Positions 3,156 through 64,000 are shown, counted from the stretch's first letter. The stretch is DNA of 64,000 nucleotides from IMGVR_UViG_3300037010_001227:62001-126000; one strand, 5' to 3'. Notes: generated from the letters alone by a model not told the origin. Program-made: numbers and translations.

Positions 3156-3229
3156 TGGTGTTTCTGACAGGAATTGAACCCGTATAAACTATTTTAGAGA
3201 TAGCTGCTCTACCGTTGAGCTACAGAAAC
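3156..3229 (-). tRNA. amber suppressor tRNA (CTA anticodon)
   Basis: GTTTCTG/CAGAAAC acceptor, A73, CCA; GCTAT-CTCTAAA-ATAGT anticodon arm; canonical D- and T-arms. Confidence 0.9.
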
Positions 3230-57794: not shown

Positions 57795-58013
57795 TGGTAT
57801 CCCCATTGCATAACTACGGCAGTTTTTACCTGGAATTTTCTGCCGATTTCATCAAAATTCGTGCCAATTTGAGCGAATGCAACCTTTATGCCAAAATCCG
57901 CTGGAACGTTTTGATTACTTCAATAATCCTTGCAATGGCTCCAGGGTATCAAGTGAAGCAAGCAAGCGCGGCACGGCGAGCCTAGAGCATGGCGTGCTGC
58001 AAAGATCATGCCA
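57795..58013. promoter_or_regulatory. cluster of four sigma54-type -24/-12 motifs
   Basis: TGGTAT-CCCCA-TTGCA (+57795), TGGCAC-GAATT-TTGAT (-57866), TGGCAT-AAAGG-TTGCA (-57893), TGGCAT-GATCT-TTGCA (-58013). Confidence 0.6.
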
Positions 58014-58155
58014 AGGTGGCGTGATTACTTCAGTAATCCTTGTAATGGTTCCAAGGTATCAAGTGAAGCAAGCAAACGGAACACAAAGGAAAGCTGATTA
58101 CTTCAGTAATCCTTGTAATGGTTCCAAGGTATCAAGTGAAGCAAGCAAACGGAAC
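57912..58155. repeat. three ~57-61-bp direct repeats (tgattacttcagtaatccttgtaatggttccaaggtatcaagtgaagcaagcaa)
   Basis: Copies start at 57912, 58022 and 58095; internal GATTAC/GTAATC palindrome. Confidence 0.9.
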
Positions 58156-58234
58156 AAATATCACGTTCCAAAGTAACCAAGCTAACATGGGATAAGCTGG
58201 TTACTTAAACCATCCCAAACGAAAGGGGTCTATC

Positions 58235-58822
58235 ATGGCTCTTATCAAGACTGTCTCTCTCTGCGGGCTGACCTGCAACGTCGAAACCAACGACGACAAA
58301 GAGAAGGAAAGTGTTTCCTTCGTTTTCCCCGAACTGACTTTCGAGAAGGGGGTCAGGGGCTCGAAGGAAAAGGAAATCAAGACTGTTTCCATCGGCAAGC
58401 GCAGTTTCAATGCGGTGCTTGATCTTTTCGAGCTGGTGAAGGACCCCGCCAGCAGGGCCGCTATCTCCGATGGCAAGCTGAAGGAATTGAGCCCGGTTCT
58501 TTACAAGGCCGTGATCAATTCGGGGAATGATCCCGAAGAGTTTTACCTCTCTGCTGGCAGTATCATTGCAGAGATGGAATCTGAGGAAGAGAATCTTTCT
58601 GCAAGCAATCCCAACAACATTGCAGCCCGTGCCATTGCTTCCGTGTTTACCATGGAAGATACGGCGGAATCCTGCAATCCGCAGGATCTTCTCCAGAAGT
58701 TTATGGAGAAGCTGGACATGGCAGAAGTGAAGAAACTTCTGTCCAAGTTTGAGGAACTGGGACGGTTCGATGATGGGAGTCTCAGGACCCGCAAGCAGAA
58801 GGCAACCTCGAAGGCCGCGTAA
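58235..58822 (+). CDS. hypothetical protein with GC-rich codon usage
   Basis: SD AAGGGG; visibly higher GC3 than neighbouring genes. Confidence 0.75.
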   Translation: MALIKTVSLCGLTCNVETNDDKEKESVSFVFPELTFEKGVRGSKEKEIKTVSIGKRSFNAVLDLFELVKDPASRAAISDGKLKELSPVLYKAVINSGNDPEEFYLSAGSIIAEMESEEENLSASNPNNIAARAIASVFTMEDTAESCNPQDLLQKFMEKLDMAEVKKLLSKFEELGRFDDGSLRTRKQKATSKAA

Positions 58823-59003
58823 CACCTGGAGTAATAGCCGGGACTCAGTAATGGGTTCCGGCTATTGCTTTGTCTATTTTTAGGATGTTTGTTATGTAAC
58901 ATACATCCTGGTTTTAATTCATTAGATACATTCGCATTCTTAAAATACATCCAGGTATCTATACAGTATTAGATACACCGAGGTATTTTAACAATGTGGT
59001 TTT

Positions 59004-59242
59004 ATTAACCCCGGAGAAAATGTCATTAATTAATCCGGATTTTATTAAATATAGTAATATATACACTTACGATTTTTCATCGTAAACCAATTTAAAATAA
59101 TTTTCATTAACCCCGGAGAAAATGTCATTAATTAATCCGGATTTTATTAAATATAGTAATATATACACTTACGATTTTTCATCGTAAAACAATCCGGAAT
59201 AATTTTAATACATCCCGGAAAAATGTCATTAATTAATCCGAA
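59004..59242. repeat. two identical 83-bp direct repeats plus a partial third copy
   Basis: 59004-59086 = 59106-59188; internal ccgga/tccgg and ttacgat/atcgtaa inverted repeats. Confidence 0.9.
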
Positions 59243-59351
59243 TATCTATTAATAGCCCGATGATATATGCAGCTGAAGTTATGGCTGATATGTTATCGGG
59301 CTATTTTTGTATTGGATTTAATACTTACAATCAGAAATACAATTAAGATTT

Positions 59352-59414
59352 TGGTATGGAAATTGGATGTAATAAATAAATAAATACAATTAAGATTTTG
59401 GTATGGAAATTGCT
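59352..59414 (+). promoter_or_regulatory. tandem sigma54-type motifs upstream of the small-gene cassette array
   Basis: TGGTAT-GGAAA-TTGGA (59352) and TGGTAT-GGAAA-TTGCT (59399) inside a duplicated segment. Confidence 0.55.
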
Positions 59415-59569
59415 CGTGTTCATCCGATAATAAACACTCTACAATTTACTAAACTTGCTCATGAGTTTAGTAACTGTGATTATCGCCCATAAGCCAGAAA
59501 TTGCTATTAGTGATTCAGTTAGGGCACTGAATAAATCACTAACAATATACATACCTATGGAGGTATCAT

Positions 59570-60265
59570 ATGTCACTTGAACAACCCATCGTAGAAAGAG
59601 TAAAGAAACTCTTGGCATTATCTAAATCTTCCAATCCTGCTGAAGCTGAATTGGCAATGATGAAAGCCAATGAACTGATTCAGAAGTGGAATATTAACAT
59701 TATCGAACACCTGGATGAAAAAACTAACAAATGGACATTCCAGGTTCATGATAACGATGGGAAGGATAGTATATTTTATGGTAATAGATTGCAGGAATGG
59801 GAACTATTTCTTATGATGAAATTAGCTACCTACTGTGATGGTAAAATTGTGCAGTACGGTTATTCAGATACAACGCGGTATTGTTTCGTTGGTCTGGAAA
59901 CTGATGCTCAATTGTGCAAGATGCTATTCTGGGATATTAATAATCGTATTCGTAGTATCTTTAACAAAATGAAGAAGGCAATGCAGCTAAAAGATCGAAA
60001 TGCTTTTAGTCTTGGTGTTGTTCTTTCTCTTTGTAATCGAATGATTGAAGCAAAAAAAGTAATGCTTCAAACCCAGATTACTGAACGTGGTCTTATTACT
60101 ATTGACCATAAGAATAATGAATTTGCTGAATACTATTCTAATCTATCTAAGGGTTTTGTTAATTCCAATCATCGATTCAATCAAGAACGAGATTGGGATT
60201 CGTTTAAGGTTGGTACGAAGGTTGGTAATGATATGGAAATGTCCGTTGTTAATCCTACTGTTTAG
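59570..60265 (+). CDS. DUF2786-domain protein
   Basis: ERVKKLLALSKSSNPAEAELAMMKANELIQKWNI signature; ...VGLETDA... Confidence 0.8.
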   Translation: MSLEQPIVERVKKLLALSKSSNPAEAELAMMKANELIQKWNINIIEHLDEKTNKWTFQVHDNDGKDSIFYGNRLQEWELFLMMKLATYCDGKIVQYGYSDTTRYCFVGLETDAQLCKMLFWDINNRIRSIFNKMKKAMQLKDRNAFSLGVVLSLCNRMIEAKKVMLQTQITERGLITIDHKNNEFAEYYSNLSKGFVNSNHRFNQERDWDSFKVGTKVGNDMEMSVVNPTV

Positions 60266-60346
60266 TATTCTAGTCAGCACATTGTATTAGAATGTGCTGA
60301 ATAGTTTACTAATCCCGGTAAACTATATATCCTATGGAGGTATATC

Positions 60347-60424
60347 GTGAGTATTGAGATTTTGTTGGACGGTGAATGGGTTCTGTTGGTTTCGGAATCT
60401 GAACAAGAGTCACACCAGGGTTAA
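60347..60424 (+). CDS. 25-aa peptide (VSIEILLDGEWVLLVSESEQESHQG)
   Basis: GTG start 6 nt after GGAGG. Confidence 0.5.
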   Translation: MSIEILLDGEWVLLVSESEQESHQG

Positions 60425-60523
60425 ATCTGAAGCTAGTATTCTGGCTAACACATTCAGTTTAAATACTTGATGTGTTAGATAGTTTACTAATCACGGTAAA
60501 CTACACGTCCTATGGAGGACACG

Positions 60524-60853
60524 ATGTCAGCAAACCAGCAGGATATGTTCTACAGTATTCTCAGCGGTAGTGGATTTCTTACCACTACCCAAGCTGAAGA
60601 ATTGGCTGAAAAATGTGCCAATTCTGTTCAGCATTTCACGGATGACCAGGACCCGTTTCCTGTTCTTTACGAGGATAGGAATGTGGTTATCTATACCAAT
60701 GGGTCCAACGAAATCTTCATTAAGGAGAAGAACACACTCTCCGAAATGAGGATGAATTTCGACAACGGGATTCAGTTCACGGCCCAGGGTCACTACGTGG
60801 AACCATACTCCACCAATGGTTTAATTGGTTGGAGGGTGAAGAAGCGGAAGTAG
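60524..60853 (+). CDS. hypothetical protein
   Basis: Start moved downstream of the GGAGG SD; GC3-rich codons. Confidence 0.75.
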   Translation: MSANQQDMFYSILSGSGFLTTTQAEELAEKCANSVQHFTDDQDPFPVLYEDRNVVIYTNGSNEIFIKEKNTLSEMRMNFDNGIQFTAQGHYVEPYSTNGLIGWRVKKRK

Positions 60854-60928
60854 TAGTTCAGTCAACACATCATCTCAACTATTAAGATGATGTGTTGAAT
60901 CAACTACTATCCTATGGAGGATACCATA

Positions 60929-61120
60929 ATGTTTCTCTTAATTACCACTGTCTTTACCAAGAAACGAGTTATTAAACTTGTTGATAAAGTTGGTGAAAGC
61001 GGTAAAGAAACAAGTAATACATTGAAAGCATTTGGCTTTAAAGGGCCGGATGTGCATTCACTATTTGAAGGATATCCAGTAGAAGTAAGTAATAAGACAT
61101 TTTCATTACAGAAACAGTAG
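60929..61120 (+). CDS. hypothetical protein
   Basis: Start moved downstream of the GGAGG SD. Confidence 0.7.
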   Translation: MFLLITTVFTKKRVIKLVDKVGESGKETSNTLKAFGFKGPDVHSLFEGYPVEVSNKTFSLQKQ

Positions 61121-61192
61121 TAGCTCAGTCAACACATCCTCTTAATATAGATGATGTGTTGAATCAACTACTATCCTATGGAGGATATAACA

Positions 61193-61324
61193 ATGAGAAT
61201 ACAATTCATATGTGGTTGTGGAGTTCGCAACTACAATCTTGGAGATTGGCTCTGCCATTTTAAACAAAGTGGATTTTTGCGTGGAATGAGACACCTGTTA
61301 AAAACAAAGATTCAATTCAAGTAA
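61193..61324 (+). CDS. 43-aa Cys/His-containing peptide (MRIQFICGCG...)
   Basis: Hand translation; GGAGG SD. Confidence 0.65.
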   Translation: MRIQFICGCGVRNYNLGDWLCHFKQSGFLRGMRHLLKTKIQFK

Positions 61325-61341
61325 TATCCTATGGAGGATAT

Positions 61342-61494
61342 ATGTTAACTCTTTATCTAATCAGAGATATATACGGAACGGTGTTAGCTGCATGGAAAAT
61401 GGCTCTAACTACAGAGTCTATTTCTCCGAGTAAAAGAATCAAGGCCGCCGACGATCAGCTGATTGAATATGCAAAACAAGAGTCATATCAGTAA
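61342..61494 (+). CDS. 50-aa peptide (MLTLYLIRDIYG...)
   Basis: Hand translation; GGAGG SD. Confidence 0.65.
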   Translation: MLTLYLIRDIYGTVLAAWKMALTTESISPSKRIKAADDQLIEYAKQESYQ

Positions 61495-61540
61495 GTTAGT
61501 CAATAATTGTAACTCAAAGTTCTATATGAAAGGATAAGTC

Positions 61541-61690
61541 ATGAGTTTAGCTGACATTTGTTCTCAATGCTCAGATAGTCTTACTTGTTTAACAGCATAT
61601 ATAAAACCATGTGCTGTTTTATCACAAAACAACGCATCTCTGGAGACGTGTGATGACAATACAACGAATGTTCAGGATTTGGAACGTTAA
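61541..61690 (+). CDS. 49-aa Cys-rich peptide (MSLADICSQC...)
   Basis: Hand translation; AAGGA SD. Confidence 0.55.
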   Translation: MSLADICSQCSDSLTCLTAYIKPCAVLSQNNASLETCDDNTTNVQDLER

Positions 61691-61853
61691 TACTATTAAG
61701 GTTCCAGTTCATAGATTTCATAGATAGTCTTTCATCCTGGATATTCTAAATATATCCAGGCTAAAGGACTATTAATCCTATGGAGGGTTAAATGTAGAAA
61801 GTAAAACTTCTTTGTTACAATAGATGTATCTGATTTTTGGTAGTATTATTAAT

Positions 61854-61939
61854 GGCCCTATGGTGAAATTGGTAGACACAAAGCACTCAAAATGCTTCGC
61901 TCACAAAGCGTTTCGGTTCGAATCCGAATAGGGCCACCA
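61854..61939 (+). tRNA. tRNA-Leu(CAA)
   Basis: GGCCCTA/TAGGGCC, AAGCA-CTCAAAA-TGCTT, V-arm, A73, CCA. Confidence 0.95.
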
Positions 61940-62078
61940 ATTCTATTTAAACAACCACTGTTAATGCTGGTATAAGAATAGTCTTATACTGGTGTGTTTG
62001 TTGATCCTTGTAGTGAGAGAGTGTGGGAACACAACAAGACAGTGGTTATTTAAATAGAATTGCAGCATCTTCTATAAG

Positions 62079-62363
62079 ATGTATGAATGCAAAACAATGT
62101 TAAACACTTTCTATAACTACGCCAGGAAAGTGTTAGGAAGTATATTTGGCGTAGATAAACAATCATTCTATAGGTGTTCTATGAATTGCAGTAATTGTGG
62201 TTCTGAACTGATTTATAACGCTGGTTACGCATGGAATAGTAAGAAACTCTGTGAGGCTTGTTTTCACAATGAGTATTCGAGTGTGATTTCCCTTAAATTT
62301 AAAAGTAACCAGTGCCAGGATACATCCGACACGCTTGTACTGCAATCTGAGACTAGGAGATAA
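62079..62363 (+). CDS. Cys-rich hypothetical protein (CSNC...CEAC); start uncertain
   Basis: ORF track; Zn-ribbon Cys pairs. Confidence 0.5.
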   Translation: MYECKTMLNTFYNYARKVLGSIFGVDKQSFYRCSMNCSNCGSELIYNAGYAWNSKKLCEACFHNEYSSVISLKFKSNQCQDTSDTLVLQSETRR

Positions 62364-62486
62364 CCTAGTGTGATTGGAAGTTTTGAAACGGAGAATTATG
62401 CGAGCGACAATCACACATGCAGAGACTAACTGTAATCTGCGCTTGGTTGAAGTAAGAGTAAATGGGTTTCTACAGGAGAATAACTA

Positions 62487-62696
62487 ATGCCAAGAGGAAA
62501 CGAAAAGTTTAAACCCGTCTTAAAGTTTGCACTGGTTGTTGATCCTGACGGGAAAGAACCAGATATTGAAGTTTTTGATACCCTTAAAGAACGCTGTGCG
62601 TATGTTAATGTATTGAGGTCAATTGATACTCCATATATATTGTTTCCATCTCCTGCTGTTAGTTTTGAGATGGCTAATTATGAAGAGTTAGCTTAG
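62487..62696 (+). CDS. hypothetical protein
   Basis: SD AGGAG. Confidence 0.7.
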   Translation: MPRGNEKFKPVLKFALVVDPDGKEPDIEVFDTLKERCAYVNVLRSIDTPYILFPSPAVSFEMANYEELA

Positions 62697-62864
62697 TTCT
62701 TTAGCATCCAGATTCTTAATATCTGGATGATAAATAACTAACACAAAGAAGGTAAGCTAGTTAAATTAGCAAAAAGCAAAGAATAGAACCATCAACAGAA
62801 GTATTAGTTCTGAGATGGATTGGTTAGAGGATAATTACTACCCACCCACCATACGGAGGATAGA

Positions 62865-63221
62865 ATGCTCTATCTAGTAACAATTCCTATTCCTAATTCC
62901 TACGGGGATGGAGTTTTCGAGCAACCTTATTATTTCAGTGCTGACAAGTTTCCTTCTTGGGAGACAATCAAAACTGAAATTAAGAAGCTACATGAACGGG
63001 ATCTTAATTATCCTGAATATCGTGGTTGTCACGATCATGCACTATACACACTGAAAATGGCAGAAATGAAAAAGATTGAATTGCCGAGATTATGGGGCAA
63101 TCTCTGTCAATCTGCGGTTCCTTACGAACATGCGTGTGGTCATAGTTTTATTTCTGCAAGATCTATTCGACCTATTGTGGTCGAAGAACCTGTTGCAGAG
63201 ATGCAAATGTATTCTGTGTAA
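62865..63221 (+). CDS. hypothetical protein
   Basis: SD GGAGG. Confidence 0.75.
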   Translation: MLYLVTIPIPNSYGDGVFEQPYYFSADKFPSWETIKTEIKKLHERDLNYPEYRGCHDHALYTLKMAEMKKIELPRLWGNLCQSAVPYEHACGHSFISARSIRPIVVEEPVAEMQMYSV

Positions 63222-63318
63222 ACAGGATATTCCACATAGTAGTTGTGATAACAACTGATACAGATTATTCAGCACATTCTCTTAGGATGATGTGCTGTAT
63301 TAATTTGTAGGAGGATGT

Positions 63319-63465
63319 ATGGACGTTCTCGTTATCTACCGTATATTGACTGACTTTAGGCAACTACAATTAGACATTCTGGAGGTAGAAGTAACAGATG
63401 TTAAAGCTGAATTTAATGAAAGAAAAGAACAGTTAAAGAAACGGCATCCACAACAAGAAGAATAG
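63319..63465 (+). CDS. 48-aa peptide (MDVLVIYRILTDF...)
   Basis: Hand translation; SD AGGAGG after a cassette stem-loop. Confidence 0.65.
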   Translation: MDVLVIYRILTDFRQLQLDILEVEVTDVKAEFNERKEQLKKRHPQQEE

Positions 63466-63474
63466 GAGGCAGTT

Positions 63475-63738
63475 ATGAAACTGCATATCTATCAAATCGA
63501 CAAGAAAGAATACACCAGAGATTTAGTTGCACTTCTTACAGTATCCTTGAGGATCATGTTTAATGATTCTCTTGAACTGGAAGAAGTAACTAAGACTTGC
63601 ATTACCGCTACAATCAAACACCTTGGTTTTCAAGAAGAGGATGAGTATTATCTTACTGAGATGTTAAGCAATGTAACTGGAACTGATAACCTGACATTGA
63701 TCTTAACAGAACAGACTGAGGAACAACATGTGGCATAG
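63475..63738 (+). CDS. hypothetical protein
   Basis: SD AGGAGG. Confidence 0.75.
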   Translation: MKLHIYQIDKKEYTRDLVALLTVSLRIMFNDSLELEEVTKTCITATIKHLGFQEEDEYYLTEMLSNVTGTDNLTLILTEQTEEQHVA

Positions 63739-63864
63739 AAACCCAAATGTTTATAGAAAGGAACCTTATTGGTATTGTAATCCTACCTTTAGAGTATCCT
63801 TTCTACTCTCTACACTAAGCATATTAACGTTCTTTGGAATGTATTTATTACTGCGGTAACCAAT

Positions 63865-63941
63865 GGACCCTTAGCTCAGTTGGTTAGAGCATTTCCCTTT
63901 TAAGGAAGTGGTCATCGGTTCAAATCCGATAGGGTCCACCA
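63865..63941 (+). tRNA. tRNA-Lys(TTT), second copy
   Basis: GGACCCT/AGGGTCC, TTTCC-CTTTTAA-GGAAG, A73, CCA. Confidence 0.95.
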
Positions 63942-63964
63942 ACTCTTTCTTTCAGGAGGATGTT

Positions 63965-64000
63965 ATGAAACGTCTACTTGGACACGAAACACGAGAAACT
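63965..64000 (+). CDS. 5' end of an ORF running off the window
   Basis: SD GGAGG then ATG AAA CGT... Confidence 0.5.
   Translation, partial: MKRLLGHETRET

What the first reader, a model, noticed from the sequence alone, without database searches (positions are those of the whole stretch)
59505..63320. Array of small-gene cassettes each led by a conserved long stem-loop
Related 25-40-nt hairpins precede successive small ORFs: ca(a/g)cacat/atgtg(t/c)tg at 60275, 60445, 60862, 61129 and 63270; (cat)cc(a/t)g(g)at variants at 61736 and 62705; ttagtgatt/aatcactaa near 59506. Two carry a second tagtttac/gtaaacta hairpin. Stems are conserved while the AT-rich loops vary. Established analogues are T7 early RNase III sites and the T4-type PeSL elements that shuffle gene modules. 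Inference: a modular host-takeover or anti-defence cassette array of mostly unannotated 25-120-aa proteins, with repeats acting as both processing and recombination sites.
Basis: partly seen in the sequence, partly recalled or inferred. Interest (0 to 1): 0.74.

Follow-up and report, generated by a model that had tools for sequence, protein, structure and literature searches.

The report
Hairpin linkers between phage gene cassettes
An uncultivated 213-kb phage separates its small unknown genes and tRNAs with conserved RNA linkers (stop codon, long hairpin, masked ribosome-binding site) that look like RNase III cutting sites and mark where genes are swapped between related phages.

Summary
The window lies in a 213-kb jumbo-phage contig from a microbial-mat metagenome. 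Between same-strand small ORFs and tRNAs sit long imperfect hairpins, with 20-27-nt arms and z-scores of -4 to -8. Each starts at or near the upstream stop codon. Each ends just before a conserved ribosome-binding motif, CCTATGGAGG, found 7 times in the window against 0.04 expected, and that motif folds into a small hairpin masking the Shine-Dalgarno sequence. Three relatives from other metagenomes share this design. Covariation is strong (12 of 25 and 11 of 21 pairs compensatory), mismatch positions are fixed, and G·U substitutions point to plus-strand RNA. There is no U tract, no room for a promoter and no integrase. The phage encodes its own RNase III, which is rare in phages. Gene content between the hairpins differs sharply among relatives, and one environmental variant lacks exactly one 153-nt cassette, with the junction inside the repeated ribosome-binding module. 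Best reading: promoterless stop-hairpin-SD linkers in a polycistronic array. They most likely serve as RNase III-type processing sites (untested) and as homology for cassette shuffling (supported by comparison). This is a new variant of T7/SP82 RNase III sites and T4 PeSLs. A host-takeover or anti-defence role for the genes is unsupported.

The parts
59507..59542 (+). Leader hairpin before the first array gene. Its 3' half (AAATCACTAAC) is shared with the F3-type hairpin at the same place in relative L030.
   Evidence: (z -4.1)
59550..59567 (+). SD mini-hairpin (AUACCU-AUGG-AGGUAU) containing CCTATGGAGG. It is the first of 7 such modules in the window; the others contain the motif at 60331, 60509, 60911, 61175, 61328 and 61777.
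59570..60265 (+). 231-aa ORF with DUF2786/DUF7168 domains (phrog_421). It is the anchor gene shared with the relatives (64% and 48% identity).
60262..60312 (+). F1 long hairpin starting at stop codon TAG 60263. A competing second hairpin lies at 60302-60325, followed by the SD module.
60347..60424 (+). 25-aa ORF with a GTG start (ATG in the X4 variant). This cassette is absent at the equivalent place in relatives L030 and L033.
60434..60489 (+). F1 long hairpin, with a second hairpin at 60480-60503 and then the SD module.
60524..60853 (+). 109-aa ORF. Its C-terminal ~70 aa form a small-protein family of unknown function (49 representatives) and are homologous to the 100-aa ORF of L030.
60851..60909 (+). 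F1 long hairpin (8 bp, 3x3 internal loop, 14 bp). It begins with TAGTAG stops and ends 1 nt before the CCTATGGAGG motif.
   Evidence: (z -8.2)
60929..61120 (+). 63-aa ORF, homologous (51%) to the ORF that directly follows the DUF2786 gene in L033.
61118..61173 (+). F1 long hairpin followed by the SD module. The hairpin 3' arm plus SD module is the only piece matching L074:290-334, which has unrelated genes on both sides.
61172..61324 (+). 153-nt cassette holding the SD module and the 43-aa ORF (61193-61324). It is bounded by 18-nt direct repeats TATCCTATGGAGGATATA and is skipped in one contig of sediment metagenome X4.
   Evidence: D5; joint 61171->61325
61342..61690 (+). Two small ORFs (50 aa at 61342-61494, 49 aa at 61541-61690) with no homologues in the relatives.
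61724..61772 (+). F3 long hairpin, followed by the SD module and a start-stop minicistron (ATG TAG, 61792-61797). This looks like a linker left without its ORF, upstream of tRNA-Leu.
61854..61939 (+). tRNA-Leu(CAA) embedded in the array.
61938..62062 (+). 125-nt Y-shaped structured element abutting the tRNA 3' end, with a 24-bp basal stem. It is more conserved in L030 than the adjacent tRNA.
   Evidence: I5; z -7.6
62079..62696 (+). ORFs 62079/62183-62363 (zinc-ribbon-like), 62398-62487 and 62487-62696. Relatives L073/L074 carry a ~930-nt insertion with two extra genes between 62405 and 62473.
62693..62741 (+). F3 long hairpin starting at stop codon TAG 62694. The hairpin and the following 124-nt spacer are absent in L073.
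62865..63221 (+). 118-aa ORF, 84% identical to a 130-aa protein in L073-L076.
63259..63309 (+). F1 long hairpin ending at the SD of the 48-aa ORF (63319-63465). Its orthologue in L073 is 96% identical.
63475..64000 (+). Continuation of the array: 87-aa and 43-aa ORFs, tRNA-Lys(UUU) at 63865-63941, and the start of a 120-aa ORF. In L073 that ORF is replaced by two other ORFs.

Best explanation
The region is the head of a long same-strand, apparently promoterless polycistronic array. It runs from about window 59,440 to at least 68,390, and a second block reaches about 72,970. It holds ORFan genes and tRNAs.

Adjacent units are joined by a portable RNA linker with three parts:
- the stop codon of the upstream ORF, sitting at the base of the hairpin;
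- a long imperfect hairpin of about 21-25 bp with mismatches at fixed positions;
- a small hairpin, UAUCCU-AUGG-AGGAUA, that half-masks the downstream Shine-Dalgarno sequence.

Shown here: the hairpins are selected as structures of the + strand RNA. They are conserved in relatives while the genes between them are not. At least one cassette indel has its junction inside the repeated linker.

Inferred: the long hairpins are endonucleolytic processing sites of the RNase III type, cut by the phage's own RNase III and/or the host enzyme. Cutting would split the transcript into gene-sized mRNAs and tRNA precursors, leave a protective hairpin at each upstream 3' end, and free the downstream translation start. 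Because the linkers are repeated, they also provide the short homologies at which homologous recombination or replication slippage gains, loses and swaps cassettes. Any incoming ORF then receives a stop codon, a processing site and a ribosome-binding site.
For: Structure:
- All 8 window hairpins have z-scores of -4.1 to -8.2, and none was matched by any of its 200 shuffles.
- Arms are 20-27 nt, about two helical turns.
- F1 alignment of 12 sequences from the window and L030: 82.7% of cells paired against 23-46% in slid controls, 12 of 25 pairs with compensatory changes, 0 of 500 shuffles. RNAalifold independently predicts the upper stem, with 8 of 12 pairs compensatory.
- F2 alignment of 9 sequences: 77% paired against 35-46%, 11 of 21 pairs compensatory.
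- Mismatches sit at fixed columns and there is a conserved U·G.
- Orthologous hairpins in L073 are 88-96% identical against 70-78% for the flanking DNA. All five substitutions in the 64339 hairpin keep pairing only through G·U, so the + strand RNA is the selected molecule.
- The SD mini-hairpin covaries in its three outer pairs, 0 of 500 shuffles.

Placement:
- The stop codon lies at the stem base and the SD directly follows the stem.
- Covariance models find members only inside the array in the 213-kb genome. They also find independent members in L073 and L074.

Not terminators or promoters: the scan calls no terminator-like or sigma70-like site in any module.

Enzyme:
- The phage encodes a full RNase III, with catalytic domain and dsRBD and the ERLELLGDS motif.
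- RNase III is rare in phages. Only 13 of 50,697 GenBank phage records match, and the one matching record inspected (H14) is bacterial DNA.

Precedents:
- The T7 early ~7-kb precursor is cut at five RNase III sites (PMC4858673).
- SP82 early mRNA carries B. subtilis RNase III sites (cited in PMC4838370).

Shuffling:
- Only the DUF2786 gene, the 109-aa gene and the tRNA-Leu element are shared with L030, and only the DUF2786 and 63-aa genes with L033.
- There are several replacements and insertions relative to L073/L074, with homology blocks starting at SD or hairpin modules or at a tRNA.
- A 153-nt cassette deletion lies between 18-nt SD-module repeats in run X4.
Against: - There is no RNA evidence at all. 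No RNA run was listed, so neither co-transcription nor cleavage is shown.
- The host is unknown.
- The phage RNase III carries Arg where E. coli has the metal ligand D114 (GRAFEALIG, read), so its activity is uncertain.
- The hairpins carry small 1x1 to 3x3 mismatches rather than the large asymmetric internal loop of T7 sites.
- The X4 deletion rests on one low-depth contig (depth 2.9, 33 nt on the shorter side).
- Breakpoints at gene boundaries are partly expected for any gene-wise turnover.
- One hairpin (62693) is followed by a 124-nt spacer rather than an SD, and several gene junctions have no hairpin. The linker is therefore not obligatory.
Confidence: 0.55

Rival explanations
1. The hairpins are RNA 3'-end stabilisers, or pause or attenuation signals, that work without RNase III. 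They could act as barriers to 3' exonucleases after cleavage by another nuclease such as RNase E or RNase Y. They could also be U-tract-less, factor-dependent terminators that set decreasing expression along the array.
For: - Stable plus-strand RNA hairpins sit right after stop codons.
- PeSL stem-loops in T4-type phages act as attenuators (PMC2839356).
- The phage RNase III lacks one canonical acidic ligand.
Against: - There is no U tract, and the stems are AU-rich rather than GC-rich. No module hairpin is called terminator-like.
- Simple stability does not explain mismatches conserved at fixed positions, or the uniform ~21-25-bp length.
- True terminator-like hairpins with T runs exist elsewhere in the genome and look different.
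Confidence: 0.2
2. The linker is mainly a translational device. The long stem places the upstream stop codon next to the downstream SD, so that terminating ribosomes re-initiate (coupling). The UCCU/AGGA mini-hairpin sets a low basal initiation rate. Processing would be secondary or absent.
For: - The stop codon lies in the first nucleotides of the 5' arm, and the SD follows 1-10 nt after the 3' arm in most modules.
- The SD mini-hairpin is conserved with covariation and folds at -4 to -7 kcal/mol.
- In two modules a second hairpin competes with the lower stem.
Against: - The same hairpins flank tRNA genes, and one precedes only a start-stop minicistron (61724-61797), where coupling has no role.
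- Hairpin 62693 lies 114 nt from the next SD.
- A 25-bp stem is not needed for coupling.
- This reading does not exclude the best explanation.
Confidence: 0.12
3. The repeats act at the DNA level, either as attC-like sites of an integron-like site-specific recombination system or as selfish miniature inverted-repeat elements that have spread between genes.
For: - The layout resembles an array of small, same-strand, promoterless ORFs separated by imperfect inverted repeats.
- Two copies contain GTTGAAT, which fits the attC R' core GTTRRRY.
- Cassette content varies among relatives.
Against: - The ~95% complete genome holds no tyrosine recombinase.
- The core-site match occurs in only 2 copies.
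- The observed junction lies in the SD repeat and shows 18 nt of homology, the signature of homologous recombination or slippage.
- G·U-preserving substitutions and conserved wobble pairs indicate selection on one RNA strand.
- No target-site duplications or terminal inverted repeats were noted around the units, and each begins at or near a stop codon.
Confidence: 0.05

Closest known systems
RNase III processing sites of the T7 early region (R0.3-R1.3) and of Bacillus phage SP82 early mRNA
   Same: - Intercistronic hairpins of about two helical turns with internal non-paired positions.
- They are placed between the genes of a multi-kb same-strand early-type array.
- Copies within one genome resemble each other.
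- No U tract follows them.
- The T7 early precursor is ~7 kb and is cut at five sites (PMC4858673). SP82 sites are cited in PMC4838370.
   Different: - Cleavage is not shown here.
- The mismatches are small and symmetric rather than one large asymmetric internal loop.
- The stem base contains the upstream stop codon, and the 3' arm abuts an SD-masking mini-hairpin.
- tRNA genes are interspersed.
- The phage carries its own RNase III, whereas T7 and SP82 use the host enzyme (own knowledge).
- The linkers also mark cassette turnover.
PeSL (promoter-early stem-loop) cassettes of T4-type phages (PMC2839356, PMC4122927)
   Same: [quoted passage not shown]
- They flank ORFans in a hyperplastic region.
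- Indels and replacements between related phages occur at the motifs through short homology.
   Different: - PeSLs are defined by a strong sigma70-like promoter plus a GC-rich stem-loop that terminates transcription.
- Here there is no promoter consensus, and often no space for one, since the SD follows 1-10 nt after the stem.
- The stems are AU-rich and 21-25 bp long, with conserved mismatches.
- The phage is not T4-like.
- Mini-circles were not tested.
Integron gene-cassette arrays with attC sites
   Same: Promoterless small ORFs of unknown function, all in one orientation and separated by imperfect inverted repeats, with cassette content that varies between relatives.
   Different: - There is no integrase and no conserved R''/R' core.
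- The junction shows 18-nt homology in the SD repeat.
- Selection acts on the RNA strand.

Membership tests
RNase III processing site (T7/SP82 type) | Double-stranded stem of about 20 bp or more (two helical turns) | tested here: met
   13 of 14 hairpins have arms of 19-27 nt with 17-23 pairs; the leader hairpin is shorter. The folds are significant.
RNase III processing site (T7/SP82 type) | Conserved internal loop or mismatches that define the reactive site | tested here: met
   Mismatches sit at fixed alignment columns in 10-11 of 12 (F1) and 7-9 of 9 (F2) sequences. They are smaller than the T7 internal loops.
RNase III processing site (T7/SP82 type) | Intercistronic position in a polycistronic precursor | tested here: inconclusive
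   The position between same-strand ORFs and tRNAs is met. No internal promoter or terminator is called. The transcript itself is not observed.
RNase III processing site (T7/SP82 type) | Specific cleavage by RNase III in vivo or in vitro | not testable with these tools
   No RNA run was listed. This needs an enzyme assay or end mapping.
RNase III processing site (T7/SP82 type) | An RNase III enzyme is available during infection | tested here: met
   The phage gene at L072:1828-2493 scores 90.8 bits on PF14622 and carries a dsRBD. Arg replaces the E. coli D114 equivalent, so activity is unproven.
PeSL (T4-type promoter-early stem-loop) | Strong sigma70-like early promoter with an AT-rich UP region inside the element | tested here: not met
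   No promoter-like hit falls in any module, and the region as a whole is not enriched (23 found against 28 expected). The SD follows 1-10 nt after the stem in most modules. Caveat: the host and its promoter type are unknown.
PeSL (T4-type promoter-early stem-loop) | GC-rich stem-loop acting as terminator or attenuator | tested here: not met
   The stems are AU-rich with no poly-G/poly-C and no T run, and none is called terminator-like.
PeSL (T4-type promoter-early stem-loop) | SD and start codon at the 3' end; element spans from stop codon to start codon | tested here: met
PeSL (T4-type promoter-early stem-loop) | Flanks ORFans in a hyperplastic region; indels and replacements between relatives occur at the elements | tested here: met
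PeSL (T4-type promoter-early stem-loop) | Excised mini-circles formed by recombination between flanking elements | not testable with these tools
   This needs inverse PCR or long reads. The contig-level data showed only a deletion joint.
Integron attC array | Adjacent IntI-type tyrosine recombinase | tested here: not met
   PF00589 is absent from the 213-kb genome, while the controls were positive.
Integron attC array | R''/R' core sites (RYYYAAC ... GTTRRRY) at the ends of each repeat | tested here: not met
   GTTGAAT occurs in only two copies (60851 and 61118). The other copies read GCTGAAT, GTTAGAT and similar.
Intrinsic (rho-independent) terminator | GC-rich stem followed by a U tract | tested here: not met
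   None of the module hairpins is listed by the terminator scan. Genuine candidates lie at 58827-58872, and by eye at 59251-59305.

The most novel reading that the evidence does not exclude
The phage runs a self-contained, orthogonal mRNA-maturation system. Its own RNase III, with an unusual Arg at the D114-equivalent position, would recognise family-specific hairpins through their fixed mismatches. The same stop-hairpin-antiSD/SD linkers would form a plug-and-play expression socket that lets promoterless ORFan and tRNA cassettes move between phage genomes by short-homology recombination. In effect this would be an integron-like gene-capture array that needs no integrase and no per-gene promoter.
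Probability: 0.2. Interest if true: 0.8.

Novelty: new variant of a known kind. Interest (0 to 1): 0.55.

Why it matters
Most genes of large uncultivated phages are small ORFans, and how they are expressed and exchanged is poorly understood.

This array offers a compact, testable design. A single reusable RNA linker supplies the stop codon, a probable processing and stabilising hairpin, and a tuned ribosome-binding site. The linker is conserved across relatives whose genes have been swapped.

If the hairpins are cut by the phage-encoded RNase III, this would be a rare case of a phage carrying both the enzyme and its cognate sites. It would be useful as an orthogonal RNA-processing tool. It would also explain how promoterless cassettes stay expressible after shuffling.

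If the hairpins are not cut, the conserved mismatch pattern still points to an unknown RNA-binding partner.

Tried and rejected
Searches for relatives:
- Megablast and blastn against GenBank phages found only tRNA-sized matches.
- Four of the five IMG/VR scans found no relative:
  - the 16-mer TATCCTATGGAGGATA gave 23 single chance hits that tblastn showed to be unrelated;
  - the hairpin-plus-SD pattern gave 0 hits;
  - the 125-nt element pattern gave 0 hits;
  - the DUF2786 protein gave 0 hits.
- The fifth scan, with the RNase III protein, found one 33%-identical homologue, L078. Its record is not held, so it could not be searched further.
The element pattern gave 0 hits, and the DUF2786 profile gave only relatives of 20-32% identity, of no use for synteny.

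Annotation searches:
- Rfam found only the two tRNAs.
- PHROGs and Pfam gave nothing for the ORFans, for the upstream neighbours, or for most downstream ORFs.

RNA evidence: none was listed.

Ideas rejected:
- An alternative genetic code. A tRNA with anticodon CUA is present, but reading TAG as sense gains less open frame than either other stop codon, so table 11 stands.
- An integron-like system. The genome has no integrase.
- Intrinsic terminators or sigma70 promoters inside the modules.
- Strand asymmetry of covariance-model scores as evidence. The models were trained on the + strand, so the asymmetry is trivial.
- GenBank "phage" RNase III hits as comparators. The one matching record inspected (H14) is a bacterial lepA-lepB-rnc-era locus.

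Full report
**Context.** The window is bases 62,001-126,000 of a 213,189-bp IMG/VR virus record that is about 95% complete. DNA runs from microbial-mat and sediment metagenomes hold it. It carries phage hallmarks: a baseplate hub/lysozyme-like protein, ribonucleotide reductase, an SbcC-like nuclease and exonucleases. It has 12 tRNA genes in the window and about 35% G+C. GenBank phages hold no near relative. The standard code applies, because reading TAG as sense gains less open frame than reading either other stop as sense.

**Observation check.**
- The hairpins are longer than described. The repeat finder reports arms of 21-28 nt at 84-90% complementarity for the hairpins at 60262, 60851, 61118, 61724 and 62693, and 25-nt arms at 76% for the one at 60434.
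- RNA folding gives -11 to -28 kcal/mol and z-scores of -4.1 to -8.2. No hairpin was matched by any of its 200 dinucleotide shuffles (independent script).
- In most cases the 5' arm begins at or beside the stop codon of the upstream ORF. The codon is TAG in the F1 and F3 families and TAG, TGA or TAA in F2.
- In most cases the 3' arm ends 1-10 nt before CCTATGGAGG. This motif occurs 7 times in the window against 0.04 expected. It occurs 8 times in the whole genome, all on the + strand within 5 kb.
- Long hairpins are enriched in genome 120-140 kb, at 25 of 87 hits, or 1.25 per kb against about 0.3 per kb elsewhere. The array continues beyond the window to about window-equivalent 72,970 with a second sequence family, F2.

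**Relatives.** IMG/VR and JGI scans found no close relative. Protein look-ups did find contigs from other samples:
- L030-L032: DUF2786 protein 64% identical.
- L033: 48% identical.
- L073-L076: about 77% nucleotide identity.
- L077: a more distant phage with the same style of hairpins.

All of them show the same design: a stop codon, a long two-tier hairpin, sometimes a second small hairpin, and then the SD.

**Selection on an RNA structure.**
- In the F1 alignment (12 sequences), 82.7% of cells pair against 23-46% when partners are slid. Twelve of 25 pairs show compensatory double changes, and no shuffle out of 500 reaches the observed covariation score. RNAalifold independently predicts the upper stem, with 8 of 12 pairs compensatory.
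- In the F2 alignment (9 sequences), 77% of cells pair against 35-46%, and 11 of 21 pairs are compensatory.
- Mismatches are conserved at fixed positions (F1 columns 15/53 and 26/42; F2 columns 9/47 and 12/44). F2 also keeps a U·G pair. This argues for recognition by a partner rather than stability alone.
- Orthologous hairpins in L073 are 88-96% identical, while the flanking DNA is 70-78% identical. All five substitutions in the 64339 hairpin keep pairing only through G·U, which would be C·A on the other strand. The folded molecule is therefore the + strand, the sense strand of every gene in the array.
- Covariance models built from the two alignments find only the 5 + 5 known members in the 213-kb genome. 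They also find independent members in L073 and L074.
- The SD motif forms a 6-7-bp mini-hairpin (UAUCCU-AUGG-AGGAUA) at -4 to -7 kcal/mol. Its three outer pairs covary.

**What the hairpins are not.**
- The scan calls no module hairpin terminator-like, and they have no T run. Genuine terminator-like hairpins lie outside the array.
- No sigma70-like promoter is called in any module, the region is not enriched for such sites, and there is often no room between stem and SD. The defining promoter and GC-rich terminator of T4-type PeSLs (PMC2839356, PMC4122927) are therefore absent.
- No tyrosine recombinase is present, which removes the integron reading.

**Most likely mechanism.**
- The uniform duplex length of about two turns fits RNase III substrates. 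So do the fixed internal mismatches, the intercistronic position and the association with tRNA genes. One full linker sits upstream of tRNA-Leu, followed only by an ATG-TAG minicistron, and a 24-bp stem abuts the tRNA 3' end.
- The closest known systems are the T7 early precursor, about 7 kb and cut at five sites (PMC4858673), and SP82 early mRNA (cited in PMC4838370).
- The phage encodes its own class-1 RNase III of 221 aa, with the ERLELLGDS motif and a dsRBD. Only 13 of 50,697 GenBank phage records match it, and the one I inspected is bacterial DNA.
- The enzyme has Arg where E. coli has D114 (read from the sequence), so its activity is not assured.
- Cleavage itself is an inference, because no RNA run could be listed.

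**Cassette turnover.**
- Against L030, only the DUF2786 gene, the C-terminal domain of the 109-aa gene and the tRNA-Leu plus 125-nt element are shared. The 4-10 ORFs between these anchors are unrelated.
- In L033 the homologue of the 63-aa ORF directly follows the DUF2786 gene, so the 25-aa and 109-aa cassettes are missing there.
- Against L073/L074 (about 77% identity) there are five differences:
  - a ~930-nt insertion with two genes, preceded by a CCTATGGAGG module;
  - loss of the 62693 hairpin and its spacer;
  - replacement of the 120-aa ORF by two other ORFs, between tRNA-Lys and the 64339 hairpin;
  - absence of three small ORFs, the tRNA-Leu and its element;
  - one place where the hairpin 3' arm plus SD module is the only sequence conserved between two pairs of unrelated genes.
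- In sediment run X4, one contig skips exactly 153 nt (61172-61324, the 43-aa ORF cassette). Eighteen shared letters (TATCCTATGGAGGATATA) lie at the joint. That is the signature of short-homology recombination or slippage in the linker. It is a single low-depth contig, so it is supportive rather than conclusive.

**Verdict.** The finding is real. Processing is the best mechanistic reading but is untested. The gene functions are unknown. I file this as a new variant of known kinds: it works like T7/SP82 RNase III sites and like PeSL linkers, but it fails PeSL membership for lack of a promoter and a terminator stem.

Noticed in passing
window 61938-62062 (and L030:4757-4885): A 125-nt Y-shaped structured element directly abuts the 3' end of tRNA-Leu(CAA). 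It has a 24-bp basal stem and two arms, folds at -49.3 kcal/mol and has a z-score of -7.6. By eye it is over 90% identical in relative L030, while the adjacent tRNA is only ~70% identical. It has no Rfam match. The tRNA and the element are both absent from relative L074, where an 85-aa ORF occupies the place. It is a candidate phage non-coding RNA or tRNA-linked mobile module.
   Followed up: partly
window 61792-61797: A start-stop minicistron (ATG TAG) sits 5 nt after a complete hairpin-plus-SD linker and 56 nt upstream of tRNA-Leu. It looks like a linker whose ORF was lost or displaced.
   Followed up: partly
window 59000-59412: There are three tandem ~102-bp repeats. Two encode an identical 21-aa mini-ORF with an SD, and the third is degenerate. 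A strong hairpin with a T run follows at 59251-59305 and looks like a + strand terminator. Two exact 31-nt repeats spaced 47 bp apart follow at 59335-59412. This could be the regulatory leader or origin-like region upstream of the array. A weak sigma70-like hit lies at 59404-59431.
   Followed up: partly
G000:C1:141828-142493 (L072:1828-2493), outside the window: The phage encodes an RNase III with a dsRBD. It keeps the ERLELLGDS motif and the E117 equivalent but has Arg at the E. coli D114 position. RNase III homologues are very rare in GenBank phage records, and the one matching record inspected is bacterial DNA labelled as phage.
   Followed up: partly
window 3156-3229 (- strand): A tRNA with anticodon CUA (called tRNA-Pyl by ARAGORN, so suppressor-like) lies in a cluster of 10 tRNA genes. 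The genome shows no sign of TAG reassignment. TAG is the stop codon built into many of the hairpin linkers.
   Followed up: partly
window 57960-58880: A G+C-richer island holds very stable hairpins (-26 to -33 kcal/mol). Long ORFs overlap on both strands (58235-58822 on +, 58205-58825 on -). Neither has a Pfam hit, and the coding strand is unclear.
   Followed up: partly
L077 (Logan ERR13731090), whole locus: A more distant phage contig carries a homologue of the 109-aa protein's C-terminal domain. It has several tRNAs, an HNH gene and the highest density of long two-tier intergenic hairpins seen (1.8 per kb). The design may be widespread in this phage group.
   Followed up: no
L071:5346-6167 (window-equivalent 69346-70167): A RadC-like JAB-domain protein (PF04002, 75 bits) lies in the second block of the array, downstream of a convergent minus-strand 267-aa gene.
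   Followed up: no
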